The notes under the pieces: generated by a model
What the model saw: only the letters and a program-made list of their open reading frames with translations
What the model was told of the DNA's origin: nothing
The model's database searches: none
Part shown: in pieces, positions 25,524 to 43,506 of the stretch
Numbering within the stretch: position 1 is the stretch's first letter
How the letters are laid out: each line of letters begins with the position of its first letter
Position numbers and translations under genes: made by a program
Source of the DNA: Dimorphilus gyrociliatus
Lineage: Eukaryota; Animalia; Annelida
DNA length: 64,000 nt
Assembly: GCA_904063045.1 (NCBI GenBank)
Contig: CAJFCJ010000005.1
Coordinates: 759,988-823,987 of the forward strand
Direction of reading: 5' to 3'

Positions 25524-27668
25524 AGTATCTCATCCTTTTTCTTTCAGTATTTAATTAACATTGTTTTGTTTATTACATTATTTCTTGTATCACTTGATAG
25601 GCTTGGATATATCCTTTCAACTCTTATGTATGTTTTTACAATTTAACTTCAATCTTTATCTTAGTGTCAAAGAGACGGTCGCTGATGCCTTATTTGTGCT
25701 TAACGTCGTCTTAAAACCATCATACGGCTTTAGGCATTTAGCTTTTAAAAGTAAAACCACAGACGTATCCAAAGTTTCATCGTCTTTAATGAAATTACTA
25801 TCAATCTGCTCTAGCATAGGCCTATAGGGTATATTATTTATAGACAGAGAGTATATAGGCACATCTTGCAGTACGTGACTCACTCATAATAGATTTATAG
25901 AACACGAAACTAGGCAGAGCTATTCCCTGTAAAACTGCAATATGTCAACTGCAATTAACAAATAATTTTCATTCAGTAATAATAATTTCACGCTGTGTAT
26001 AGGCTTAACTAACAAAGAATTAATAAGGAAAATACCAAGTGGCCCCCAGTATAGAAAATCTCTCTCTCTGCAACACCACGAAAGCCACTTGCTGTGATAA
26101 AAAAAATAATCAAGGTCGACTGAAAATAATTACAGTAGGGATATAGGTTTTCTCCATTCTTTACAAATGACAGTATGATCAGCAAGGTATTGCATCACGT
26201 GATATATCTTCTCTATAAGTTATGGATGAATAGATACGAAAAAGTATTCCTTCTTGTTTCTATTTTACCATCTCCTTCTTCATACAAAGTTCTACTTAAA
26301 TCCTTCTGAATGCATAATACTTGGAGAAGAGCAAAAGAAGAGACATTCCACAAATTTTCTTATCTCAGCTAAATTTGCAGATTCCCTGGAAATTGCTAAA
26401 CAGGATAATGGTATATGAATTAGGCGTCTGGAAAATCGCCCCCCAGAAGGAATACCTTGACGCCAAACTGAACTATTAGATGATGTAATCATGGAGAGTT
26501 TTATCCAAAGTGAACTAATTTATGTTTGAAGAAAAGAAAAGATAATTAAAGAGAAGAGAAAAAGAAATAAAGTGAATAGGATGGAATTGTCTTGTTATAA
26601 CTTTTATAAAAATGATTTTAGTCCCCAAAAAGGCAAAAATAAAAAAAATTCTGCAAATAAAATGGAAAGGAAAATATTGAAAGAGAATAAAACGAGAAAA
26701 TTTCATCTCCTAGTGAAATTTTCCGTTAGTTAGAAGGAAAAGTATCTTGTTTAGCAGACGGCTTACTAGAAATTGACCAAAAACAGATTCGATAAAAAGA
26801 GGCTTACTCGTTTAGAGGCTAAAAGTATGCTATTTATATATTATATGAGAGGAGAGTACTTTTTTTCGGGTACTTGATCATTTTTTATGTAGTATTCGCA
26901 TAAACGTATATTACGTATCAGTCTAAATATAGAAACATTACATGTGTTCCAGTTCAAAGGAGCTTTCATAGGAAGAAAAGAAGAAGAAACCTGGCTATTA
27001 CGAGCTTAAGACTGAGTAATACCACGATTATGTACGTGCAGAGGAATTTAAAGAGAATGAAGAGGTTATCGCCGCCTCAAGAGAGGAAAGATTATAGATG
27101 AAAATTAATCTAGACACAAAATAAACAAACGTCGATTGCGTGAGAGTCAAAAGAGAATTCATATATGCAAAACAAAAGGAAAAAACTATTTGGAAGTAGA
27201 AAGAAAACAAAGAAATTAGAGAAAAAATTTTCCTTTTAGGGTCGAAAATACGTTAGTTTTTAGTTCGTTTGATTGGGAAGAAGAAAAGAAGGGAAATAAA
27301 GGCGAGAACACTAATATTACGTTCGTAGTAATAATTTTATACTGATTTATCCATACGTGTGTATCATAAAATGAGAGTTTTATCACTTTTATAGTGTTAT
27401 GCATAGTCCAAGCATTTTTACGTTTTCCACTTTTTATTGGAAACGGAAAAAGGGGAAGTAGAATAGCAAACGGCAGCAACAGCAGCAACAGCAGCGGAAA
27501 GAGCGACATCTTTTTTTTTTGTTTTTTACAAGTTTACCTATTATCAACTATATAGGATGACGGTACGGTTAGTGTAACAGATTCTTTTTTTAGAGTAGAT
27601 TACTTAAATATTGCGTGCGAATATTCCCGATTCGAAACTACTTATTTCTAATCTAATTTGTAACTTAC

Positions 27669-28193
27669 CTTGGCTCCCGTGGACGAATAAGGTTCATCGA
27701 ACAGCGCCCAAATTTTCGGCTTAACTTTTTGCCAACAATTCAAGTCGCCTGTTTGATATTCCTCCTCTAAACCGAATTTTTTCATCATTTCTTCTTCTGT
27801 AGGTTTATCCGTATCCAAGTCCAATCTATCCAATATTTGTAACGTCTCCTGAGTGTCCCGGTGACTGGTATAAGTCATCCAGCAGCACGGTTCTACTTGA
27901 TTCGAATCAAGACCCCAAAATTCGAGCTCTTCTTCGAAAAGTGGACCGCAAACATCCGTCGGATAATGCAGTTTTCCAGTTCGATAATAATTCAAGATTT
28001 GTGCGAACACTCCTGGGTGACGGTCAAAAAAGTACTCGTTTAAAACCGGGTCGTAATTCGCTAAGGCTTCCGTTAATCGCGATAATCTTGTCGCCGGGAT
28101 CTTCTTCAATGTTGCTTTATAAGTTTCGTGCCTTATTCCTCCGACGTTTAATATGACGCGATTTTCCGCGTCTGAAACGTCACCGTACTGCAT
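27669..28193 (-). CDS. Shaw: Shaw/Kv3 voltage-gated K+ channel, first coding exon (T1 tetramerisation domain)
   Basis: [40 protein letters not shown]...[29 protein letters not shown] (H-x5-C-x20-CC Zn motif of Shaw-type T1)...[17 protein letters not shown] at 28193; donor AAG|GTAAGT after 27669; 525 nt, phase 0. Confidence 0.97.
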
Positions 28194-28199
28194 GACTTT

Positions 28200-28420
28200 A
28201 AAAAATATAACTCGTATTTGTCGTCTATCCTCCAACAGACTCCATCTGGATAATCCCTACCGCAATACTGCAAAGTTTGCGGCCGTATACTGCAGAGAGC
28301 GACTGTTGAGCGCATGCGCGCCGCCTTCATCAATATGTAAGTAGTCTGGTTCGCCGAGTTGGTGATGCACCTCTTAAGAATCGAGTCGGACCGCGTAACA
28401 AACACCTGTAGAGACCCTGT
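28200..28420 (-). promoter_or_regulatory. GC-rich Shaw 5' UTR/promoter region
   Basis: CpG-rich block directly upstream of the Shaw ATG, with a perfect NRF1-type palindrome GCGCATGCGC (28310-28319). Candidate acceptors near 28404-28415. Confidence 0.45.
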
Positions 28421-31840: not shown

Positions 31841-32478
31841 ACGCATGACTTCAGTTTTGAATTAAAATAATGATTTATAATAAGTGAGTATTGCCCCCAT
31901 TGAATATTAATTCTAAATGCTGTATACGATTTAGAATGGAATTTTCCTATCTTTTTTAGGTAGATTTATTACTATTTATTACAATATTTATAACTTTCGG
32001 AATAATTGAGTAGGTAGAAGAATAAATAAGTTAGCCTAATAAGATATAACCATATTAAATTTTAATTGCCTTTGTGATCTAGCCAATATACAGTAGGAGG
32101 CGAATTAAAGTGTACATAGTTCTACTGTTTCAGCTTCAGTGATATTGTACGCGTAAAGAATTTAAGTATTTCGGGAATGAGAGAATAAATGAGTTTTTGT
32201 TAAGTCAAGATGGTTTTAGACCCCGATGGATAAGACACGTAAATGAATCGGTCAATAGCGACTATAACGAGCGATATAGATGAAATTTCATCGCTGGTAA
32301 ATAAGATAAACTTCCTTGTTCTACAATAAGCCTTGGGGATGGTAGTTAAAGATAAGACTTTTCTATATATAAAAACAACACTATCAATTATATAACAAAA
32401 GCCAACCAGATTATCACCAATTGGAAGAGTAATAAGATAACGGCAATGTAATTTAGAGTATTTTTTCAAACAATTCAT
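31841..32478 (-). pseudogene. Degraded class A (rhodopsin-like) GPCR fragment
   Basis: YLITLPIGDNLVG resembles TM2 (YL.SLA..D.LVG). YCRTRKF...SSISLVIVAIDRFIYVSYP resembles TM3 with the ECL1 Cys and a DRF motif. TAA follows, then frameshifted pieces with stops that resemble ECL2 Cys, TM6 (LFILLP) and helix 8 (FKTEVMR). Confidence 0.6.
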
Positions 32479-32932
32479 ATAAATATTAAACCATAATTGT
32501 ACTGGTGCAGATTAATGACGTCAGATAAAGGGCAGGAATACTTTTCCCGAATTAACTACAAAAGAACTGATCAGCTTTATAAACTTCAAAGGCTAATAGG
32601 CTAAATTTGAGACGATTACCCTCATCTATAATCGCCCGATACAAGAGAAAGTGATCCTGAAAGATATTCAATCAATATTTTCCTCCTAGCTGTAATATCA
32701 ATTGATTTTAACACGAGGTCAGTATTCCTCTTATCTGTCAAAATCCTAATAGATAAATTCAGAGTCGTTATTCGACTTAATTGAGTTAATATTTATCTTT
32801 TCATTCTAAATATATACTTTATTAATCATTTTCTTTTGTCTTCTATTCATTAGAAGACCTAGAAACTCAATATAAGGAAAGTAAATTATATAAATATACA
32901 ATAGGAAGATAAACAGAGAAAAAGAGAGAGAG

Positions 32933-32973
<41 letters not shown>

Positions 32974-33551
32974 GGGGGGAGAGAGATGGAGGGAGAGAAT
33001 GAGTGAGTGTGTGTGTGTCTGTAGATTTTTCTTTCGCTTTTTTAACCCAATAGGAAAGGTCTAAAATATAAATTAGCAGCACTAAGAAGGATTAATAAAA
33101 GCTCTGAAAAATATTTACTTGGCTTCCAAATTCGCCCAAGCATTTTAGATTAGACGGTGTTGATCAATTATTAAAAAGAATTAGAACAATCTAAACACCT
33201 TCAATTCTTATCCCTCTTTTACTTGTCCTCTATTGAGATCATTTTTCAATTACCCCATTACCGAAATCGACCGCAAAATACATTTACTTGTATTTATGTA
33301 TTCAGTATAGTTTACAAAAAACTTTTGAGTTTGGATATGAGACAGTGACGCCACCTTACGCCTAATATAAAAATATTCTTTTTATTATTACATTAAATGA
33401 TAAATATACATTTATATAAACACATAAGTAAATTAACGATTATTTATATATAATTAATATATATGTAAGTTTTCTCTCGTGGAGGTTATTGTATGCATTT
33501 ATTCATGAAATTGATGTTTTGGTGAATATCTTTTCCTTTTATCTTATCTTT

Positions 33552-34220
33552 TCAATGAAAGGAGTAGATTGTGAGAGTTATAGCTGCAAGAAGGGATTTC
33601 AATATACCGTTGCTTAGTTTCAGAGAAGATGAATTATTATATCGGTTGAAAGATGCAGTTCTATAACGGCGTGTTGGATTTGAACAACTCGCTGTTTCGT
33701 TCCACCATTTTCTCTTTAGTCGTTTTAAAATGCCTCTTCTCTTAAAATTCTGTATTACTCTATTAAATATTGGAACATAGCCTGAATTTTTTGGAAAAGC
33801 TATACCGAAACCTTCATTTAAAAGAAAATTTCCGACCAATTCCAAATCGCAGGGCCATCTTACGGCCACATACTGAGCTATCGAATTTGGCATAATATAG
33901 GCAAAGTTTTCGGTCCGAACTCTCTTCAGTCCTTCTCGATTTGAGGAGGTCAAAGCCGATGGAGTAGAACTGATTCTCCTCCAGAGACTACTATACAAGC
34001 CTTTTTTGGTTTTTCTAAATACTCTATTGGTCATTCCGTTCCTTAATATCCCAAAACTAAGGTCACTTTGCCTAAGTAAATCTCTAGGTTGTTTTATATT
34101 GAATCGATTAGGCTTGCGAAGGACAATTGTAGCTTGAACGGTCATGAAAGATTCGGTAAATTCCATCACCTTCCTTCTTGCCGAAGTAGCAAACATTGCT
34201 GCAGCCGCCATATTACATTT
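33552..34220 (-). CDS. Pore-less iGluR ligand-binding-domain protein, last exon (end of S1 fused to S2, GPI-like tail)
   Basis: tttacag|AAA TGT AAT ATG (phase 0). KCNMAAAAMFATSARRKVMEFTESFM...VLRKP-NRFN-IKQPRDLLRQSDLSFG...AYIMP...PCDL...FGIAFPKNS...LKRKWWNETASC. Hydrophobic end, stop, and AATAAA about 50 nt downstream (33498-33503). Confidence 0.9.
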   Translation of the reverse strand, partial: KCNMAAAAMFATSARRKVMEFTESFMTVQATIVLRKPNRFNIKQPRDLLRQSDLSFGILRNGMTNRVFRKTKKGLYSSLWRRISSTPSALTSSNREGLKRVRTENFAYIMPNSIAQYVAVRWPCDLELVGNFLLNEGFGIAFPKNSGYVPIFNRVIQNFKRRGILKRLKRKWWNETASCSNPTRRYRTASFNRYNNSSSLKLSNGILKSLLAAITLTIYSFH

Positions 34221-35754
34221 CTGTAAATTTGTAAATGTTATTTACCCGTTTATTTACAGATATTATGTATGAAATATCAACTCGTAGGATTCTTTAAAAT
34301 AAATAAAGCAAGATACGTTTGAGCTGTCAAATATACGCCTAATTATTTTTCTATATTTAGAAATATCAACTAAAAGAGCAAGAAATTGCTGCTCAAATTG
34401 TCCTTTAAAAGAGCGTACGTGTTGCATCATTGACAATGTATAGGCCTAGATTATTCAAATTCCATAAACAGCAAGAAAAGTCAGAGGGGAAATTGCATTT
34501 GCCAACGTAAACGCTCGAAATGGCTTGGATAAAAAGGTATTTGCCGCTAGGCCTACAGATCTTTGTAGGTGTTTGTCGCCATCGGTAAAAAAGTGCTTGT
34601 CTTAAAAAGTGCGCAATTAGACATCGCTTTAGACGTTTCTAGTGTGTGCTATGTCAATTTTTCAAAATAAAGCAGCTATTAAATGTAAAAGGCGAGATTA
34701 GTTTGGATAGAAAGCAGAAATTTTTTAACCCGACCATCTCCAATCGGAATGTTTCCAAAAGATGGTGAAAAAAAGCCAGGGATCAGCGAGTTAATTAACT
34801 AAAATAAACACTCTTCCAGCCTAAAGAATAATAACAAATTCCGTACAATCTTCGCAAGAGACGATTCGTCCATAAAACATATAATTTTTCCACCAAACCC
34901 TCATAATTTTGCTGTATAACAATAAATTAGAATTTGCGGATTGGTTACTTCAATACCGCCTCTGAAGTTTTCCATTCCAATTGGTCTTTTTTTCTCTATC
35001 TATACCTTAAAATACTTTTTCCCGCATTCATCAATAAACTCGATAATTCTTTGGGAAAAGGGAATAAAAAAAACAAAAGAGACGCCTCTTTTAAATAGTT
35101 TTTTTGTCCTCTTTTTTAATGTTTCTTTGAAGAACAAAACGATATTATCAATCCTCTTTTTCCCTTTAGGAATTAATAGAAGTCCACTAAGGTTACATGG
35201 ATTTAACTCTTTCTACCTCTTTTAGTCTTAATACTCTTCTCACCTTGAACTCGGGCTATTATTTGAACTTACTAATTAGTTTTTTTGTAAAGGAAAAAAG
35301 ATAAGGAAACGGAGACACGAGAAAGAGAGAAAAAAGGAGTAAAGCAGAGAGGCAAAGACAGAGACAAGAGAATTAGCAAAACTGTTGAACAAGTGAAGCG
35401 GAATAATAATCACACTATTTCGTGTTTAGTTTTATACTAGAGGGAAAGGATAAGGGAGAGGAAAAGGAGGTTGGAATTAATTCGGAATTTTCTCTCCGTG
35501 GCTAATATATATATATATAGCTGGTGGAAAATATTGCAAATATAGATAATTAATTTGACATTGACGCTTTAAAAGGTTAATTAATTAAGTAATAACTATT
35601 ATGGCGTAAGAATGCGTAAAATTATAATGGAGAAGGAAAAAAAGAAGAGAAAGAGAGTGGCTTTATATTTCAAAAAGAGTAAGAAAAATCGAGCGAGGAA
35701 AGGAAAGACGGGACGGATTTGAATGTGAAAATAAATCTCAATTAATTAACTTGC

Positions 35755-35943
35755 CTTATTGATTAATCCTCCAGCAATTCCAGTCCACCTAGGTTTCTCT
35801 CCGTCAAAGTAGCGTTTTCCGTAATCTGATTGTTCTACTAACGTATATTGGAATTTCAACTCATCAGCAATTAATTGTAAAAGATCCACAATGTATCCCT
35901 TGTAAGGCTGACTGTCGTTGCTTCTCATTACGTAAGGTTCCAT
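35755..35943 (-). CDS. Pore-less iGluR-LBD protein, S1 exon
   Basis: gttacag|ATG GAA CCT: MEPYVMRSNDSQPYKGYIVDLLQLIADELKFQYTLVEQSDYG...WTGIAGGLINK, typical iGluR S1. 189 nt, phase 0-0, GC donor AAG|GCAAGT. Confidence 0.9.
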
Positions 35944-36787
35944 CTGTAACAATTCTCTTTACAGGCGGATAAAGAAGTAACATAGACAAATAGATAATTG
36001 AAGAGACAAGGACAAATAAAAAATGACCGATATGGTCGGCGGCGAGATAGAGTTGAAATGCAACAATAGTGAATGCTTTTGTAACATTTGTCTATCGTCA
36101 TTTTTGATTTTGTAATCGTCGCTTATAATTTAATGGAAAACGCTTGTTTTGTTCTATGCCTTGACTGACGTCTATCCTTTCTTTGTAAATTTTGACACGA
36201 GAGCTCTTTCGTGTTAAAGATTTAAGAAACGTCTATATATTTCACATCCTAATCGATTTCGAAATGGAAAAAGGAATACTCAAAGAGAGAGAGATTGAAA
36301 ACTGTCCGGAAATAGGAATGAAATAAATCAACTTCAGTATCAGGTGATTTTTTCCAGGTTCTTGCAGCTTGATAAAAATCCTGCACGAAATCTTTCGGTT
36401 GAAGAATATTCTTCTGTCTCTACTGATTTTCCTTTGAAAGAGAGCTCTCTAAAAATTTCCCCACAAGTAGGGAATTTTTATAAAGTTTTAGTGTATAAAG
36501 ATAAATCTATTAGGCGTCGAAATACGCTGTAGAAGAGAATAATAGCCAAAAAAAAGTCTGTTTTTTTTATCAATTTTTGTTGTATCTGTCAATATCTTCT
36601 TTTGCTTATTCTTTCTTTCTCTCTTTTTTTTTATTTTCGTTCTATTTTTCACGTATCTCTCTCTCTCTCTCTCTCCATCCCCCGATTCCATCACTTCACC
36701 CATATATCTTTTCCCCCTTCTTCCCTCCCTTCCTTTATTGTTATTTGTTTACATTTCAATTAGTTTTAGTATTAAAAATGTACTTAC

Positions 36788-36840
36788 GACAACTGTACAC
36801 ACTTTAAAAGCGTAGCCGTCCGAATTAGACGCCAGTAAAT
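36788..36840 (-). CDS. Pore-less iGluR-LBD protein, exon 2 (end of signal peptide and first S1 strand, FKVCTVV)
   Basis: ctttacag|AT TTA CTG...GTT GTC|GTAAGT. Joins in frame to give YAFKVCTVV-MEPYVM, equivalent to iGluR VTTIL-E.PYVM. Confidence 0.75.
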
Positions 36841-36957
36841 CTGTAAAGACGAGTGATGAATGGAGCGATAATTTTATAGAGTGATAAAGTGGATTTTTTG
36901 GTTTGGAATGCGATGAGTGTAGTTTACGAAATTGCGTGTGGTAAAAAGTTCTCGTAC

Positions 36958-36982
36958 GAAAAACTATATTTAAATATTTCAT
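36958..36982 (-). CDS. Pore-less iGluR-LBD protein, putative start exon (MKYLNIVF)
   Basis: aaaaATG AAA TAT...TTT C|GTACGA, phase 1, followed by a 117-nt intron. Gives MKYLNIVFHLLASNSDG-YAF, a plausible but marginal signal peptide. Confidence 0.5.
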
Positions 36983-39900
36983 TTTTTCCACCTCAAGTAA
37001 GCCTATGAAAAGAACCCATCTATCCAATTTTTCCTCTTAAATCCGTAGTCATTTTATTATAGAAGCTAAGTGATAAACGAGCTATTAATAAATAAACAAT
37101 GAGTGCGCCCGGAGGAAATAGTTTACAAGAGTGTTATTTCGAATTGCATGACGAACAAGCGCTATCTTCTCTCATAAAAATTGCGCAATAATAATGTATT
37201 TTAGCTTATTTACTTTTCATTACGACTATTAAAGTCAATAATAGCTGGAATCAAAATCACAGTTAATTAGATTTTTAACTATTTTTATAAACCTTGCATA
37301 GGCACCTTTCAGGTAAAGCATCCTTGCATCGGATGCTATATTATTTTTAGTTAATGGCGGATAATCTTACTATATCATTTCTTATTTGAAGAAAGTACTA
37401 TCTTATTTTTTCCTGTATACTTAAAATAAAAATAACCAAAGCAAATATTAATATTTTAAAGCAAAAACCACTTTTATCATTAATTTAAAGTTACAATGAA
37501 TAGGGGGGAAAAAAGAGAGGAATAACTCTATAACTAATCAATAATTGACATTTTTACGTCGTCTATAACCGGTATTTATCCAGTCGATATACAATATTAG
37601 GAAAGAATGGCAGTAACTCTTTGATAGCCAACCATCAATTCCTATTTTTTACAGTTCCCTTCCTATTCATGCCTAATTATGAAAAGTACTAATTACGCGC
37701 GATTGTCGAATGATGCAGAAGAAAAGATTTGATGAGCGTTTTGATCCTAAGGCCTAAATTGTTCGGAGATTTATGAAATGTCCTTGGAAATCGATTTCTG
37801 TCATTGTCCTACCTACCGATAATTTTAATTAATTCATATGAAACTGCGTCCCTTTTTCCTTCACTTAACAAACGTTGATGAAAAATCTAAAAACTTCCCA
37901 GTTACCGTAATTATCATTTGATTACGTTGGTAGGTTTAGCCAAACACCGCAAAATATTATTGGCTTATAGCAATAATACAGCAATACAGCAGATAGATAT
38001 AAAATATAGAATTTCTTCCTTTCTAATATTACCTAGTTCCAAAGCAGATTAGGACAGAGAGAGAGAGAGAGAGAGAGATTGACTAGCTCTCGAAAAGGAA
38101 AAAGGAGAAAAAACTGACACCGACGAGAGAGAGAGAGACAGAGAAAGAGAGAGAAGGAGAGAAAGAGAAATAACGCTTCATACTTATGCTAATATCTAAA
38201 TACCCAAAGTGACAGAAATATTAGGATATTATCGCCGATGATATTTTTTTTAAGAAAAAAAAATCACCAAAAAAACGATCATGTCTAAAAGTTTAAAGAG
38301 AGAAAAAGTCCGATTCAAAAATTCTTCGTTTGAACTAAAAAGAAAATCTTTAAAGTATACAAAAATTCCATTCGTATGAAAAAAAAAAGTTGGAAAGAGA
38401 AGAAGAGAGAGAAGCTTGAATTATTTACGAATGTCAAAATCTGGTAAACAATGTGGCCGATTATGCGTCTCTAATCCAGTTTATTCATCAGATCAATTCG
38501 AATCAAATATCAAATTCAATATTTAATAGAATTATTTACAATTAATCAAGCGTCGGCGAGTAACTACGGCGGCGACCCGACCGGTTAGCTTTTTCTCCTA
38601 CTGTTAAAATATCCTTCTCATCCCGCTAATTCGGTGACGAGGTTGACATTTAGTTGGAAAATTATCCTAGGAGTGTCGAAATCGTCCAAAATAGGCCTAA
38701 GTAGACGTCACTTCAATTAGGCCGATCGCAATGCGTCACGCGAGAAGATTTTTTGAGGGCGGAAAGGAAGGGCGTGATTCGATTAGGTTTAATCAAGGAA
38801 CATTTCCCTGGAATATATTTTTTATTTGTTTAATTTTTTTGTTTACTGATTTGTAATAGTCAACGCCTCCGCCGACCTATCGCCTTGTTCGTAGCCTCCC
38901 ACACAACCTCCTCTTACCAACCCTCCTACTCGCTTGACGATCGTTTTTTCTCTCTTTTTCTCTACCCCACACCCTTCTCATTCATCCATCACCGTCCGTC
39001 TACATTGAAACGTTTCCGTGAGTAAAAGCTATAGGCCTAAACGGAAGGAAAGTAGTCGCTGAGTTTTTTCTGTTTCCCAACAAGTACCCTTTCAACGATA
39101 ATAAAAAGTTGATTCTTTACTACTGAAGGTTATACGAATCCTCATCAATATGCAAATAGAGATGAGACGACGGCTTAATTATTTCATACCAAAAATTCTC
39201 CATTTAACTCATTATAAATAGCATAATACTGAGCTTAGCTTTCGTATACTATTACGTAAATACAATGAATTCCAGTTCAATCTCATTAAATAGGCAACTT
39301 AATCGGCAATAATACAAGATCATAGCGATATTCGTCCGCAAAAACTCTCTACACCAACCTCCCCTCCCCCTTATTTCCGCCCCTTGACTTCTACCTATCT
39401 ACATAATAAATATTATTTAGATGTTAATTAACTTTAATTTATTAATAATAATAAAACATTGTAAGCTTAATAAGCTAACAACGGAGTCATACTCTATATG
39501 CGTCAAAAGAAAAGGGACACAAGTTGAGTTCGCTCATTTCATAAATCCTTTCGTTTTAGTATTGGATATGTCGTTCTCTTCATTTATCAAACTCGACTTC
39601 CACTCAACAGGCATTTTGCAGTAAATTTCCCCGATTATGATCTCGCTAACTTTGTTCTTTGACGTAAATCATCATACGCTGTACGTTGTATAACTAAGCC
39701 TATATAATGTATTCTATTAATAAAATTATAACTATCTCTTCTTTACGCGTATTGTTTAGCTATCAACCTTCTAATTGAAAAGTTAGCTAGAACAGCGAAA
39801 TTCGAAAGGGAGTAATAAATGAAAAATGGTTTTATTTGTAATATATAAATATATATATATACTGTATATAGGCCTAGCGCATTTATAAACAGTATCGGCA

Positions 39901-41842
39901 GTATATTTAAATATTATTTTTTATACTAAACGCTCACAATAGACACAGTATATATTTTTATATCATCGATTAAGCGATAGAGGTTTATTGCTTTTCAATC
40001 TCATACCATATAACCAAGAAATCATATTCAGATTACTCTTAAAAAATTTCAATATCAATTATCTTTATTCTTCGCAGCTTGAGGCAAATCTGGAAACTTT
40101 TTCCTTAATTTTTTTTATTCCTTACTATATTTCCTTTCTTTCTCTCTTGTTTTGTATGTGTGTGTGTGTGTTTTTTTTTTCCTCTCTTCCTCTCTCTCTC
40201 TCTCTTTCTCTTCTCTTATTTTATTTCTTTCTTTGTCACTTGGAAAAATTTCTTTTTCTTTTTTTTTATAGTTTATTTTAAAACTTTAATCTCGCTTCAT
40301 CCGGATAAGTAAAATATGCCTATCCACCTATGTCGGTCTAATTAAAGCCTAGGGAAAAAACACTTAATATAGTTATAAGGTTTGGAACGACCTAATTAAA
40401 GGTTTGTTGGAGAGAAAATGAGAAAATTTAGAAGAGTATGTAATGAAAGTAATTTGTCATCCATGCATTGTTAGACAAGATGACGCGATTTGCTAGCCTT
40501 TGTCAATTTTTCCATTCCATCTAACGCCATTAATTTCTACTTATCTCGCCTACTACGACAAACTTGTTATTATTTCATATTTTCCTACTAATACTGATTA
40601 TCGATAGATATATATCTATATATATAAATATATTGGAAAAGCTTAGAGATAATCTGGCCTTTCTAAGTCACCTAAAGAAATTCTCTTTTTGCGCTTTTCT
40701 CTCCCTACCATGGAGACTTTTACAGCTTATTAAAAAAATTGATTCAAGAGGTTTTATCTTGTCTCTCGGTTTTAAGACCTTTGATAACTCATGAAATGAC
40801 GAATACACAGAAATTCTAATTCCTCTTAAATTCAAATAGGAAAAGCTGACATACTAACATATTAAAAACTACTGCACTAAAGCGTTCTCTTGTCCAGACC
40901 AGACATTACGCCTACCCGATCAAAGGAAATGATTTTATCAAGAATAATTGACAATATAAAAATATATATATGTCCCTACTAGAAGTTTTTCACATATTTC
41001 ATCTTTTATTCTTTTTTCTCCTATACATCTAACGTGTTGTATTCTAATCTATAATTAAATAATCAAAAAAGTATAAGAGGTTTTTCTCCTTTTAAAAACC
41101 AGTTGAAAAATTAATGAAAAGACCAAAAATCTTTTATGATAATGATGATTTACCATTCGGAAAGGAAATAGGGATAATGCTATTTAAAACACCAACAAGA
41201 TACAAACATACTTCCCTTTTGACTCGAAGTTATTATCGAATCTTTTCCAATTATTTTATTACAATAATTAAAACGCTTAGATATAATTAATTCCTTCAAT
41301 TAGTTAAAAGCCAAATTGTTCAATCACATTGATTTATCTTTCATTCAGTAGGATTTCAATTAAGAAAATCAACTCATAATGTAATATTTTTCCCATTCGC
41401 CTTCTCCTTTTATTAAGAGATAATATAGAAATATAGAATAAAACAAGGAAAAAAGAAAAGATCTTTCCCTTTACCCTTTAAGACCTTTTTAAGAAATTTT
41501 TTGTGACATTTTTCGTGAAGAGTATAAAAAGACAGCTTTATCAAATTTGTATATATATATATCTCATACATATTGTTTAAAGAGATTATACATGATAGAG
41601 AAACAGTATAGATGTAAAAGCTCACTTTTAATGTAAATCACATTTTAAAAGATTATTTTTTTTTTAAAAAAACAAACTTAAACATAAAATTATCTTAACT
41701 AGTTTTCTTAATTTAAGTAGAATAAGAAAAAAGTTAAAACTTACCAAAATGTAGAAATATTATGAAAGAATATTTAAATAATTTTCCAAATTTCCTCATG
41801 ATTTTATGGATTAGTAGTGGTAATTATTTTTTCTTATAAACA

Positions 41843-41939
41843 TATATGTATATTGATACATACATATGTATCTATATATATATATCTATATATATATACA
41901 TATATATATAAATATATATCTATATATATATATACATAA

Positions 41940-41970
<31 letters not shown>

Positions 41971-41972
41971 TA
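41843..41972. repeat. Compound TA-rich simple repeat
   Basis: TA runs interrupted by C/A variants. Confidence 0.9.
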
Positions 41973-43506
41973 TACTTTTTATCGTTAGAATACTTTTTTC
42001 CTCTTCCAATCAAGGAGATAGAGTGTCTATCAAACGCCTTTGAAAACCAAAATAAAAGTTAATACGTTCCAACGATAGGTGTCGTCTATGTATGAAATGT
42101 ATTATAATTCGTCAAAACATTTTCTGTATTTAGTGTTGAAATTGCAGTGGAATTGTCATTCATTTCCCTTCTACTAATTCGTTTTTAATTGTTTACCTAA
42201 AGTAATTAAATCAAGCGTTTCCGTCGTTCTCTGCTTAATTATGATAAATGCAACGTTAAAAACTTCTGGCATTCTATTCGGAAGAATATTTATCGCCAGA
42301 TGGAGCCAAAATCAATCACTCTTTCTATCCCCTCTCCTTTTTGCCCCTCTTCCTCTTCCTCTTTTCCTCTTTCGCTCTTTAGGAAATGGATGTAAGCCAC
42401 TCTCTTTTATATATCAACAGCATTTAGAGGAAATTCGATTTGGGAGGCAACATTCTTTTCTATATTCCATGATTTTTTTCTCCCGATAAAAAACGGGAAA
42501 TTCCTTTTGGTAATTTCGTATAGATAATTTAAAAATAAAAGACATAGGAAACTAAATTAACCTCTATCTTCTTCTTCCATCTCTCTCTCTTTTTTTTTCT
42601 TTCTCTCTCTCTCTTCTTACTTTTAAAAAAAATTATAAAGTAAAAAGTCATCTAAAGATATACATTCGACTTGACTCTTTCTTGTTCATTTAATCTACAA
42701 ACGACAGGTGTCGCTCTTCTAAGTATTCAATAAGAAGAAAGATAGAGAGAGAGAGAGAGACTATGCCACCCCTTGTAGAAAATATTTTAAATTCCTAACT
42801 TATTCGATTTTAGATAATTTCCTCAGAGCGAACTTGTTTACAAGTTTGACTGCAAAGGAAAGAATCATGATTCTAATTTGAAATAATAGGGGGGGTGGGG
42901 GGAGGGGGGAACTCCTTCAGATACAAGGTGGCGCTAATATCGATAGTATAATATAAATATTTTTGGCGTATTATAGAAAGTAAGGAAATATACGTAAAAT
43001 AGGATCAATATATCTCGATAGTAAATAAAACTGCAATTTCCCGTATTTGATTATTTTATTGCTGACAAACAGCCGTTTTTATCCTAACCAAGTAAGTTTT
43101 TAATTAATATTTTCATAATTATTAACATTTATTCATATCAAAGACGATAGAAATTATTTATAGTCGTTTTCAAGTAGTCTTTTAAGATTTCTCCAAATCT
43201 TTTCCACTGCGCCGACATTTATCGATAGGAAAAGACAAATTCACAGCGAAATATCAAAAGAATTTGCAAACTGTTAAAGAATTTCGCATTGTTTTCTCTT
43301 ATATTTTTTATCCGTATATTGCGTAATATTGATAGACTACAAGAAGATGTTTATAGTTACCCTACTATTATATGTTGACAAAAAATTCAATATTAAACTT
43401 AAAAAATTCCCTTTATTTAATAACAAAAGTGTATAAAAAGGCCAAAAAAGTTCAGTATTGAAAAAATCAATAGGCAATTTCAACGCCCTTGCCTTAGTAA
43501 GGGAAA

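What the first reader, a model, noticed from the sequence alone, without database searches (positions are those of the whole stretch)
33552..36982. A natural pore-less glutamate-receptor ligand-binding domain (S1-S2 fusion), apparently secreted and GPI-anchored
Seen: four in-phase exons give about 311 aa: putative signal peptide, iGluR S1, then inside one continuous exon S1 (..VLRKP) joined by only NRFN to S2 (IKQPRDLLRQ..). The M1-M2-M3 pore is absent, there is no amino-terminal domain and no full M4 or cytosolic tail. The S2 disulfide pair (PCDL, KWWNETASC) is intact. The C-terminus (NNSSS, spacer, ILKSLLAAITLTIYSFH*) looks like a GPI signal, and AATAAA follows the stop. Established: this matches the design of the engineered GluA2 S1S2J construct (S1-GT-S2), and molluscan AChBP is a channel-less nicotinic-receptor LBD that buffers transmitter. 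Inference: an intact, spliced gene for a surface-tethered or shed ligand-binding decoy, buffer or co-receptor, an iGluR analogue of AChBP. I do not know of this being characterised.
Basis: partly seen in the sequence, partly recalled or inferred. Interest (0 to 1): 0.92.

Follow-up and report, generated by a model that had tools for sequence, protein, structure and literature searches.

The report
Natural channel-less glutamate-receptor binding domain gene
This small marine worm has an expressed, selectively conserved gene for only the ligand-binding "clamshell" of a glutamate-receptor channel, with no pore, and it belongs to a large uncharacterised family found across annelid worms, a natural version of a construct that structural biologists build by hand.

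Summary
On the minus strand, the last exon (34220-33552) encodes the end of iGluR segment S1, a four-residue linker (NRFN, 34109-34098), all of S2, then a short hydrophobic tail and a stop. Its best matches among solved structures are the engineered GluA2/3/4 S1S2 constructs (E 3e-30, collinear).

Spliced RNA contigs from two studies confirm two introns and show no pore exons. No M1-M3 or amino-terminal-domain coding exists anywhere in the 64 kb.

An orthologue from another sample (75% identity) keeps the same junction, stop and poly(A) signal; dN/dS is 0.11. So this is neither a pseudogene nor an assembly artefact.

It is not a one-off. At least 62 cluster representatives carry the same pore-less design. 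Named members come from Capitella, Helobdella, Owenia, Lamellibrachia and Paralvinella, all labelled hypothetical. A single origin is not rejected.

Family members typically have a signal peptide and a GPI-signal-like C-terminus. The carboxylate-binding Arg is invariant. The Glu that binds the alpha-amino group is Pro in most members.

The 5' end is unresolved.

Seven searches of the held paper library found no description. Unchecked scan notes flag two more such genes elsewhere in this genome.

The parts
36788..36982 (-). Coding part of exon 1. The first in-frame ATG is at 36982-36980 and an in-frame TAA lies upstream at 37039-37037. The exon ends with beta-strand 1 of S1 (..FKVCTVV).
   Evidence: RNA contigs X3 record 12 and X2 record 11 run through this stretch and join 36788 to 35943
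36841..36957 (-). Candidate 117-nt mini-intron (GTACGA..TTACAG), in frame and free of stop codons. Both RNA contigs retain it.
   Evidence: the median intron in this species is 66 bp (PMC7854359)
36983..37383 (-). Transcribed leader as assembled (X3 record 12 ends at 37383; X2 record 11 reaches 38292). It holds 9 upstream ATGs and no long ORF. The true transcription start is unknown.
   Evidence: no Rfam family
35944..36787 (-). Intron 1, 844 nt, GTAAGT..TTACAG
   Evidence: joint 35943|36788 in X2 and X3; ends read
35755..35943 (-). Exon 2: the N-terminal part of S1 (MEPYVM.. to ..GGLINK)
   Evidence: Pfam Lig_chan-Glu_bd 44.9 bits; RNA contigs
34221..35754 (-). Intron 2, 1534 nt, a GC-AG intron (GCAAGT..TTACAG)
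   Evidence: joint 34220|35755 in X2 (depth 128.5) and X3 (depth 62.5); ends read
33552..34220 (-). Last coding exon: end of S1, linker, all of S2, spacer, hydrophobic tail and TGA stop (33552-33554)
   Evidence: AlphaFold pLDDT 90.2, 1.5-1.6 A to GluA2 LBD
34098..34109 (-). NRFN, the natural S1-S2 linker, in the place of the roughly 120-residue M1-M3 pore module
   Evidence: identical in orthologue P0001
34176..34178 (-). Arg equivalent to GluA2 R485 (binds the ligand's carboxylate); present in all 65 aligned family members that cover this column
33888..33890 (-). Pro at the position of GluA2 E705 (contact for the ligand's alpha-amino group); Pro in 48 of 70 family rows
33849..33851 (-). First Cys of the S2 disulfide (GluA2 C718 equivalent); invariant in 70 of 70 rows
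33684..33686 (-). Second Cys of the S2 disulfide (GluA2 C773 equivalent); invariant in 70 of 70 rows
33606..33683 (-). Low-confidence spacer after the LBD, holding the NNSSS sequons (33624-33638) that could supply a GPI omega site
   Evidence: pLDDT 47-59; sequons conserved in the orthologue; small-residue enrichment across the family
33555..33605 (-). C-terminal 17-residue hydrophobic tail running to the last residue (ILKSLLAAITLTIYSFH): a candidate GPI attachment signal or short membrane anchor
33498..33503 (-). AATAAA poly(A) signal, 48 nt after the stop. The same motif and context lie 47 nt after the stop in the orthologue. RNA contig X2 record 6 ends at 33495.

Best explanation
This is a functional gene of the annelid Dimorphilus gyrociliatus; the species name comes from earlier scan notes. 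It encodes only the bilobed ligand-binding domain (S1S2) of an AMPA/kainate-like ionotropic glutamate receptor.

Shown:
- The pore module M1-M3 is replaced by a four-residue linker inside one exon.
- There is no amino-terminal domain, no full M4 and no cytoplasmic tail.
- The gene is transcribed and spliced.
- It has been kept under purifying selection together with its junction and its stop.
- It belongs to a large family with the same design found across annelids.
- The domain is predicted with high confidence to fold like a GluA2 LBD.

Inferred:
- The protein enters the secretory pathway and is held on the outer cell surface by a GPI anchor, or by a very short membrane anchor.
- It closes around a small ligand that carries a carboxylate but is not a classical alpha-amino acid: the Arg is kept, the Glu is replaced by Pro, and the cleft is more hydrophobic.
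- Having no channel, it acts by binding. It may buffer or present the ligand, or serve as the ligand-binding partner of another signalling protein.
For: Sequence and fold:
- Pfam and PDB matches.
- AlphaFold on the window's last exon: pLDDT 90.2, junction region 97, 1.5-1.6 A to GluA2 LBD over about 181 columns.
- Full-length Capitella homologue: pLDDT 87.2, TM 0.92, 2.0-2.1 A.

Expression: spliced contigs in two runs from two studies, with exon depth 62-128 against 0-14 in introns.

Selection against the orthologue P0001/L001:
- 75% identity, with the same RKP-NRFN-IK junction, acceptor site, stop region and AATAAA.
- NG86 dN/dS is 0.11 overall and 0.07 in the LBD. The deficit of nonsynonymous changes has p = 3e-21.

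No pore coding anywhere in the window.

Family:
- 63 sequences have an S1-S2 gap under 40 residues, against 53 with a gap of about 120.
- Named members are all annelids.
- The window's protein sits in a clade of 40 pore-less rows, SH-aLRT 99.
- One clade holding all 62 natural pore-less rows is not rejected, p-AU 0.87.

Surface location:
- The disulfide Cys pair is invariant.
- All three N-X-S/T sequons of the last exon are conserved in the orthologue.
- Most full-length relatives have clear signal peptides.
- Pore-less tails have a median 14-residue uncharged core and 2 residues after it. Channel subunits have 21 and 66.
- Small residues are enriched before the core, 45% against 30%.

Pocket: Arg in 65 of 65 rows; Pro for E705 in 48 of 70; F, M and T at the T480, S654 and T655 positions.
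Against: - The form assembled from RNA in two runs retains the 117-nt stretch, and its N-terminus has no signal-peptide-like segment (best 10-residue hydropathy 0.42). The spliced form scores only 1.72, against 2.3-3.4 in most relatives.
- A search for the orthologue's first exon found nothing, so the N-terminus is unconfirmed.
- No dedicated signal-peptide or GPI predictor could be run. The GPI call rests on simple hydropathy and composition.
- The hydrophobic tail contains a Lys, and AlphaFold draws it as a 19-residue helix, so a short transmembrane anchor is not excluded.
- Ligand, binding partners, tissue and oligomeric state are all unknown.
- The 3' flank is about as similar as the coding DNA (76% against 78%). 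The absolute dS may therefore be overestimated, although the contrast between codon positions is robust.
Confidence: 0.72

Rival explanations
1. The protein is a type I membrane protein held by its C-terminal hydrophobic segment as a short transmembrane helix, a remnant of M4, rather than by a GPI anchor. The LBD is still extracellular and still has no channel.
For: The tail follows a motif (..LKLSNG..) resembling the pre-M4 linker of channel subunits. AlphaFold models residues 203-221 of the last-exon product as one helix. Some relatives have uncharged cores of 20-24 residues.
Against: In this gene the uncharged core is 13 residues and contains a Lys. Only one residue follows it, so there is no basic cytoplasmic stop-transfer. 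Family-wide the core has a median of 14 residues at the extreme C-terminus and is preceded by a stretch rich in Ser, Gly, Asn and Ala. That is the usual GPI-signal layout.
Confidence: 0.2
2. The real product is the 350-aa form without a signal peptide. The LBD would then be cytosolic, perhaps tail-anchored to an internal membrane, and would not sense extracellular ligands.
For: Both RNA contigs that cover the 5' region retain the 117 nt. That stretch is open in frame; my own estimate from base composition is about a 5% chance of that occurring by accident. The N-terminus of this form is not hydrophobic.
Against: The disulfide pair is invariant and the N-glycosylation sequons are conserved in the orthologue. 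Relatives have signal peptides followed directly by beta-strand 1, which is the layout of the spliced 311-aa form. The libraries also contain unspliced pre-mRNA of the other introns, and contigs drop minor variants. The leader of the assembled form carries 9 upstream ATGs, which suggests that it is not the translated mRNA.
Confidence: 0.12
3. The domain no longer binds a small molecule. It would serve instead as a protein-protein module, for example an adhesion or scaffolding partner of full-length receptors, as the GluD receptors use their extracellular domains.
For: Several classical ligand contacts are changed (T480 to F, S654 to M, E705 to Pro). The models come out with an open cleft, closest to antagonist-bound and apo structures.
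Against: The carboxylate-binding Arg is invariant in 65 of 65 family members across deep divergence, which is hard to explain without a ligand. dN/dS in the LBD is 0.07. Insect IRs with similar substitutions do bind acids; this point rests on established knowledge and was not tested here.
Confidence: 0.12
4. The locus is a decaying remnant of a channel gene that lost its pore by deletion, or an assembly collapse at the junction.
For: A single in-frame deletion could in principle produce such a junction.
Against: The genomic contig is identical. The junction is present in RNA. The same junction and stop occur in an orthologue at dS about 1.25, with dN/dS 0.11. Dozens of relatives share the same design.
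Confidence: 0.02

Closest known systems
Engineered GluA2/GluA3/GluA4 S1S2 ligand-binding cores (e.g. PDB 1ftj, 1ftk, 3dln, 3lsw)
   Same: Same topology: S1 joined directly to S2 by a short linker where M1-M3 would be, ending just after the second disulfide Cys. They are the best sequence matches in PDB (E about 3e-30). They are also the best structural matches (1.5-2.1 A, TM 0.92 for the full-length relative).
   Different: Those are laboratory constructs with a Gly-Thr linker, and they bind glutamate. This is a natural gene with the linker NRFN (2-12 residues across the family), about 31-36% identity, a C-terminal spacer and hydrophobic tail, and Pro in place of the Glu that binds the amino group.
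AMPA/kainate-type (AKDF) ionotropic glutamate receptor subunits
   Same: Homologous LBD with the iGluR-specific disulfide, the KWW motif before the last Cys, and the carboxylate-binding Arg. In the PDB sequence search AMPA-type constructs fill the top of the list.
   Different: No amino-terminal domain, no M1-M3 pore (SYTANLAAF absent), no full M4 and no cytoplasmic tail. It therefore cannot be a channel subunit.
Variant ionotropic receptors (IRs) of protostomes
   Same: Derived from iGluRs, without an ATD, with divergent ligand contacts. Some IRs keep the Arg but lose the acidic residue and sense carboxylic acids (Croset et al. 2010, PMC2924276, plus general knowledge).
   Different: IRs keep the ion-channel domain and work as heteromeric channels; this protein has none. 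It groups with other pore-less sequences, not with channel-bearing ones.
Molluscan acetylcholine-binding protein (AChBP)
   Same: Same idea in another receptor superfamily: a natural protein consisting of only the ligand-binding domain of a ligand-gated channel (general knowledge; PMC3423370 listed).
   Different: There is no homology: Cys-loop fold against periplasmic-binding-protein fold. AChBP is a soluble secreted pentamer with a demonstrated role as a transmitter buffer. This protein is predicted to be membrane-tethered, its oligomeric state and ligand are unknown, and it belongs to a much larger gene family.
Bacterial periplasmic amino-acid-binding proteins (Pfam SBP_bac_3)
   Same: Same fold, and the same stand-alone binding-protein architecture. 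The Pfam model matches above its cut-off.
   Different: The sequence is far closer to animal iGluR LBDs (about 108 bits to GluA2-4 constructs) and carries iGluR-specific features. It is a spliced animal gene, so it is a secondary return to the stand-alone state, not a bacterial-type protein.
Uncharacterised annelid proteins ELT90099.1 (Capitella teleta), ESO11012.1 (Helobdella robusta), CAH1773235.1 (Owenia fusiformis), KAI0219233.1 (Lamellibrachia satsuma), KAK2159004.1 (Paralvinella palmiformis)
   Same: Same family. They have a continuous S1-S2, the invariant Arg and Cys pair, a length of 320-345 aa, and in most a signal peptide and a terminal hydrophobic tail. Identity is 31-41%.
   Different: They are paralogues or distant orthologues. 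This gene and its 75% orthologue form a long branch next to the Helobdella sequence (support 86). They have the shortest linker type and have lost the family's commonest N-glycosylation sequon.

Membership tests
Ionotropic glutamate receptor channel subunit (Pfam Lig_chan, PF00060) | Bilobed S1S2 ligand-binding domain | tested here: met
   Pfam Lig_chan-Glu_bd 44.9 bits and SBP_bac_3 34.8 bits; PDB E 3e-30; fold 1.5-1.6 A to GluA2 LBD
Ionotropic glutamate receptor channel subunit (Pfam Lig_chan, PF00060) | M1-M2-M3 pore module between S1 and S2, including the SYTANLAAF motif | tested here: not met
   Four residues lie between S1 and S2. The S1-S2 gap is under 40 residues against about 120 in channel subunits. 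There is no Lig_chan match and no tblastn hit of 27 M1-M3 queries in the window.
Ionotropic glutamate receptor channel subunit (Pfam Lig_chan, PF00060) | M4 transmembrane helix followed by a cytoplasmic tail | tested here: not met
   A 13-17-residue hydrophobic stretch ends at the last residue. Channel subunits have a 21-residue core plus a median of 66 further residues.
Pore-less annelid S1S2 family (unnamed; e.g. Capitella ELT90099.1) | S1 and S2 continuous, with a 2-12-residue linker | tested here: met
   Junction alignment of 71 sequences; gap classes
Pore-less annelid S1S2 family (unnamed; e.g. Capitella ELT90099.1) | Groups with pore-less sequences rather than with channel subunits | tested here: met
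   Clade of 40 pore-less rows (SH-aLRT 99); 55 pore-less rows on one side of a branch with support 96; a single clade of all 62 is not rejected, p-AU 0.87
Pore-less annelid S1S2 family (unnamed; e.g. Capitella ELT90099.1) | Invariant Arg (R485 equivalent) and disulfide Cys pair | tested here: met
   R in 65 of 65 rows, both Cys in 70 of 70 rows, all present in the window's protein
Pore-less annelid S1S2 family (unnamed; e.g. Capitella ELT90099.1) | N-terminal signal peptide directly before beta-strand 1 | tested here: inconclusive
   Present only if the 117-nt mini-intron is removed, and then weak (hydropathy 1.72). The RNA contigs retain it.
GPI-anchored proteins | C-terminal signal: small omega-site residues, a short spacer, and a 12-20-residue hydrophobic tail at the extreme C-terminus with no cytoplasmic residues | tested here: inconclusive
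   The layout fits: NNSSS, six residues, then a 17-residue tail. Family-wide small residues are enriched before the core. No dedicated predictor or experiment was available.
GPI-anchored proteins | Entry into the ER (signal peptide) | tested here: inconclusive
   See the signal-peptide row. Indirect support comes from conserved sequons and the disulfide.
Variant ionotropic receptors (IRs) | Ion-channel domain retained; works with co-receptor subunits | tested here: not met
   No channel domain
AChBP-like channel-less binding proteins (a functional class, not a homologous family) | [quoted passage not shown] | tested here: met
AChBP-like channel-less binding proteins (a functional class, not a homologous family) | Secreted into the extracellular fluid, where it binds and buffers the transmitter | not testable with these tools
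   Needs expression, localisation and binding assays.

The most novel reading that the evidence does not exclude
Annelids carry an old, probably single-origin and much-expanded family of surface-tethered, channel-less iGluR ligand-binding domains. These sense or buffer non-amino-acid carboxylates outside the cell. They would be an iGluR counterpart of AChBP, or ligand-binding co-receptors that signal through a partner protein. That would be a second way, besides channels, in which the iGluR clamshell is used in animal chemical signalling.
Probability: 0.4. Interest if true: 0.9.

Novelty: new variant of a known kind. Interest (0 to 1): 0.8.

Why it matters
For 25 years the isolated S1S2 core has been an artificial tool for iGluR structural biology and pharmacology. 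Finding that animals encode the same design naturally changes the picture of what this receptor family does. Here it is in many copies, under selection, with secretory and lipid-anchor-like signals and a rewired pocket.

It gives a testable parallel to AChBP. It supplies naturally soluble domains for ligand screening and crystallography. It also points to a set of unknown ligands and partners in annelid chemosensation or neural signalling.

It also warns that surveys of iGluR/IR repertoires which require transmembrane domains will have discarded this family as fragments.

Tried and rejected
- Paralogous or pore exons in the window: none.
- Word-indexed homologue search with the last exon found only the orthologue. 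The exhaustive HMMER search was needed to reveal the family.
- Search for the orthologue's first exon, to settle the N-terminus: no hit.
The mini-intron question therefore stays open.
- Both sequencing-run runs were used.
- Twenty further cluster look-ups to learn the taxa of unnamed members gave mostly unlabelled Logan, ENA or JGI contigs. One is labelled Siedleckia nematoides, a parasite of polychaetes, and is probably host contamination.
- Presence outside annelids could not be shown or excluded. An ESM Atlas look-up names Annelida as the commonest phylum of one related cluster.
- Literature: seven searches and three papers read found no description.
- Rfam on 32500-43500: nothing.
- The acceptor at 36841 fed from a far upstream signal-peptide exon was considered and rejected, because both RNA contigs pass through it without a branch.
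- Trans-splicing was considered and rejected, because it is reported absent in this species (PMC7854359).
- The whole spliced protein of this gene was not submitted to the structure or database tools, because it has no single reference. The last exon and full-length relatives were used instead.


Full report
**What is in the sequence**

The feature lies on the minus strand. A three-frame translation of 37300-33400 shows one long open exon, 34220-33555, followed by TGA at 33552-33554.

Read from its start, the exon encodes:
- The last part of iGluR segment S1, ending ..VLRKP. It includes the Arg that binds the ligand's carboxylate in GluA2 (R485 equivalent, 34178-34176).
- Four residues, NRFN (34109-34098).
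- All of S2, from IKQPRDLL to KWWNETASC.
- A 26-residue polar stretch containing NNSSS.
- A 17-residue hydrophobic end.

Upstream, exon 2 (35943-35755) encodes the earlier part of S1, starting MEPYVM. Exon 1 ends at 36788 with beta-strand 1.

Pfam gives SBP_bac_3 at 34.8 bits (cut-off 26.4) for the last exon and Lig_chan-Glu_bd at 44.9 bits (cut-off 30) for exon 2. There is no channel-domain match.

A phmmer search of all PDB chains puts the engineered S1S2 constructs of GluA3, GluA2 and GluA4 at the top (E 3e-30 to 1e-28). They align as a single stretch running straight through the junction.

**Is it real, and is it expressed?**

Public contigs were laid on 33300-38300.
- A genomic contig (X1 record 1, depth 282) matches 33300-36318 without a difference. 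The junction is therefore not an assembly collapse.
- Two runs from two studies behave as RNA libraries, with depth 62-128 on exons and 0-14 on introns.
- X2 record 6 joins 34220 to 35755. X3 record 12 joins 34220|35755 and 35943|36788 in one 1723-nt contig.
- On the minus strand the introns read GCAAGT..TTACAG (1534 nt, a GC-AG intron) and GTAAGT..TTACAG (844 nt).
- No joint falls inside the last exon, so no pore exons are spliced in.
- X2 record 6 ends at 33495, just past AATAAA (33503-33498).

tblastn with 27 M1-M3 segments and with full-length iGluRs finds only the two LBD exons in the whole 64 kb. The window therefore holds no pore, no amino-terminal-domain exons and no paralogue.

**Selection**

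The word-indexed protein search found one relative, P0001: 218 aa, 75% identical, on roughly 1-kb genomic contigs from two runs of another sample.

P0001 keeps the following:
- The same acceptor site (TTACAG followed by AA[A/G]TGTAATATGGCGGC).
- The identical RKP-NRFN-IK junction.
- Both Cys.
- A stop after a comparable hydrophobic tail.
- AATAAA in the same context, 47 nt after the stop.

Nei-Gojobori counts give pN 0.13 and pS 0.61. dN/dS is 0.11 overall, 0.07 for the LBD and 0.45 for the tail. The shortage of nonsynonymous changes has p = 3e-21.

One caveat: the first roughly 110 nt of the 3' flank are 76% identical, about as similar as the coding DNA. The absolute dS may therefore be inflated, or the UTR may be constrained. 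The contrast between codon positions does not depend on that.

**A family, not a singleton**

An exhaustive HMMER search of 1.84 billion cluster representatives found 1879 matches. The top of the list is dominated by proteins of 200-350 aa that match as one stretch across the junction.

Measuring the distance between the S1 and S2 matches separates the sequences that carry both parts into two clean classes:
- 63 sequences with a gap under 40 residues.
- 53 sequences with a gap of about 120 residues, the pore module.

One of the 63 is a synthetic GluA3 construct present in the database.

Every member that carries an organism name is from an annelid and is labelled hypothetical or uncharacterised: Capitella teleta (ELT90099.1, ELU10795.1), Helobdella robusta (ESO11012.1), Owenia fusiformis (CAH1773235.1), Lamellibrachia satsuma (KAI0219233.1) and Paralvinella palmiformis (P0154; KAK2159004.1). 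One further member is labelled as a gregarine parasite of polychaetes and is probably host contamination.

A Foldseek search of AlphaFold DB also returned a 316-aa protein named DgyrCDS1714, apparently another copy in this species. Two earlier first-reader notes of this scan flag pore-less S1S2 genes elsewhere in this genome; neither was checked here.

In a maximum-likelihood tree of the S1+S2 columns (115 rows, 254 columns):
- The window's protein and P0001 sit next to the Helobdella sequence, inside a clade of 40 pore-less rows (SH-aLRT 99).
- 55 pore-less rows lie on one side of a branch with support 96.

Holding all 62 natural pore-less rows together gave a better likelihood than the free quick search (p-AU 0.87). 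A single ancient loss of the pore is therefore not rejected, though it is not proven. The tree has no outgroup and no named reference subfamilies.

**Fold**

The full-length Capitella member was modelled with a 71-sequence alignment. The model has mean pLDDT 87.2 and matches GluA2 LBD crystal structures at TM 0.92 and 2.0-2.1 A, best to antagonist-bound open-cleft forms.

The window's own last-exon product (222 aa) gives mean pLDDT 90.2, with 97 across the junction. It superposes on GluA2 S1S2 at 1.5-1.6 A over about 181 columns. The polar stretch after the last Cys is low-confidence (47-59), and the hydrophobic end is drawn as a helix.

**Where the protein goes**

For the family, the evidence points to the secretory pathway and a lipid or very short membrane anchor.
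- Most full-length members have a clear N-terminal hydrophobic signal, followed within 5-25 residues by beta-strand 1.
- The disulfide pair is invariant.
- After the last Cys, the pore-less proteins have a median 41.5-residue tail. Its uncharged core is 14 residues and only 2 residues follow it. Channel subunits have a 21-residue M4 core plus 66 more residues.
- In 60 of the 93 short or pore-less tails examined, the tail is hydrophobic with at most 6 residues after the core. None of 49 channel subunits fits that pattern.
- The 14 residues before the core are enriched in small residues: 45% against 30% in the body.

This is the classical layout of a GPI attachment signal, but no dedicated predictor was available.

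For this gene the C-terminus fits: NNSSS, six residues, then a 17-residue tail. All three N-X-S/T sequons of the last exon are conserved in the orthologue.

The N-terminus is the weak point.
This gives MKYLNIVFHLLASNS followed directly by beta-strand 1, the family layout, but with modest hydropathy (1.72).
- Both RNA contigs that cover this region retain the 117 nt. Retention keeps the frame open and gives a 350-aa product without any signal-like segment (0.42).
- The assembled leader extends at least to 37383 (X3) or 38292 (X2) and carries 9 upstream ATGs. It may include pre-mRNA or an overlapping transcript.
- Contigs drop minor variants, so the spliced form is not excluded.
- The species' median intron is 66 bp and trans-splicing is absent (PMC7854359).
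- A search for the orthologue's first exon found nothing.

**Ligand pocket**

Residues were mapped through the alignment onto the GluA3 construct.

| GluA2 position | Normal role | This gene | Family |
|---|---|---|---|
| R485 | binds the carboxylate | Arg | Arg in 65 of 65 rows |
| E705 | binds the alpha-amino group | Pro | Pro in 48 of 70, Glu in 15 |
| T480 | ligand contact | Phe | mostly Tyr or Phe |
| S654 | ligand contact | Met | mostly Val, Ile or Leu |
| T655 | ligand contact | Thr | Ile or Thr |

The cleft thus keeps its carboxylate anchor, loses the amino-group anchor and becomes more hydrophobic. By analogy with acid-sensing insect IRs (general knowledge), a carboxylic acid that is not an alpha-amino acid is the most likely kind of ligand. 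This is inference.

**How it most likely works**

Shown:
- A stand-alone iGluR clamshell without a channel.
- It is transcribed, spliced and selectively maintained.
- It is one of many in annelids.

Inferred:
- It is displayed on the outside of the cell on a GPI anchor. It closes on a small acidic ligand and acts through binding alone. It may buffer or concentrate the ligand, as AChBP does for acetylcholine, or serve as the ligand-binding half of a receptor complex.

The rivals are a short transmembrane anchor instead of GPI, a cytosolic product if the 350-aa form is the true one, and a ligand-independent protein-binding role. A pseudogene or artefact is excluded by the data.

**Novelty**

Seven full-text searches and three papers read turned up no description of natural pore-less iGluR LBD proteins. 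Surveys of iGluR and IR repertoires define family members by the channel architecture (PMC2924276, PMC12226733).

The sequences have sat in public databases since the Capitella and Helobdella genomes, as hypothetical proteins. I rate this a new variant of a known kind. It shares homology and fold with iGluRs but has a different, conserved architecture and necessarily a different mode of action.

Limits:
- The held library misses many subscription journals.
- The family's range outside annelids is unknown.
- No function has been tested.

Noticed in passing
window 34221-35754 (minus strand): The second intron of the gene is a GC-AG intron (AAG|GCAAGT..TTACAG), confirmed by spliced RNA contigs in two runs. 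All three acceptors of the gene read TTACAG.
   Followed up: yes
window 36990-38292: An ORF-free stretch upstream of the start codon is present in RNA contigs (X2 record 11 reaches 38292; depth about 16 against 4-9 in introns). It carries 9 upstream ATGs in its first 400 nt and matches no Rfam family. It could be a long leader, pre-mRNA, or an overlapping non-coding or antisense transcript. The roughly 6.5 kb from 37000 to 43500 has no ORF over 100 aa, which is unusual for this gene-dense genome.
   Followed up: partly
window 27648-28235 (minus strand): Exon encoding a potassium-channel-type tetramerisation domain (Pfam BTB_2, 104 bits).
   Followed up: partly
window 32200-32478 (minus strand): ORF with a weak rhodopsin-family GPCR match (7tm_1, 23.8 bits, below the 30.5 cut-off), including an ..AIDRF.. 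motif, just downstream of the gene. RNA contig X3 record 12 runs past the poly(A) signal down to at least 33300, perhaps overlapping this neighbour's transcript.
   Followed up: partly
P0113, P0165, P0166, P0136, P0122, P0060 (database proteins): Pore-less S1S2 proteins with clear signal peptides but no hydrophobic C-terminal tail, several from marine plankton transcript catalogues. They may be fully secreted, soluble versions, and in the free tree they sit apart from the main pore-less clade. Their organisms are unknown.
   Followed up: partly
P0029, P0048, P0054, P0056, P0072, P0073, P0082, P0119/P0161, P0128: A second pore-less subgroup, including Owenia and Paralvinella proteins, appears from reading the sequences to keep Glu at the E705 position and a G-x-T-E motif in S2. 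These members may still bind amino acids, unlike the Pro-bearing main clade. One search counts Glu at that position in 15 of 70 rows.
   Followed up: partly
P0002 and P0003: Two long hits (707 and 847 aa) match the query in several stretches and contain repeated M3-S2 segments. They are probably mis-assembled or tandemly duplicated channel genes.
   Followed up: no
L001 788-850 against window 33551-33490: The first roughly 60 nt of the 3' UTR, including TTTCATGAATAAATG, are nearly identical between the two species even though 61% of synonymous sites differ. This may be a conserved 3' UTR element.
   Followed up: partly
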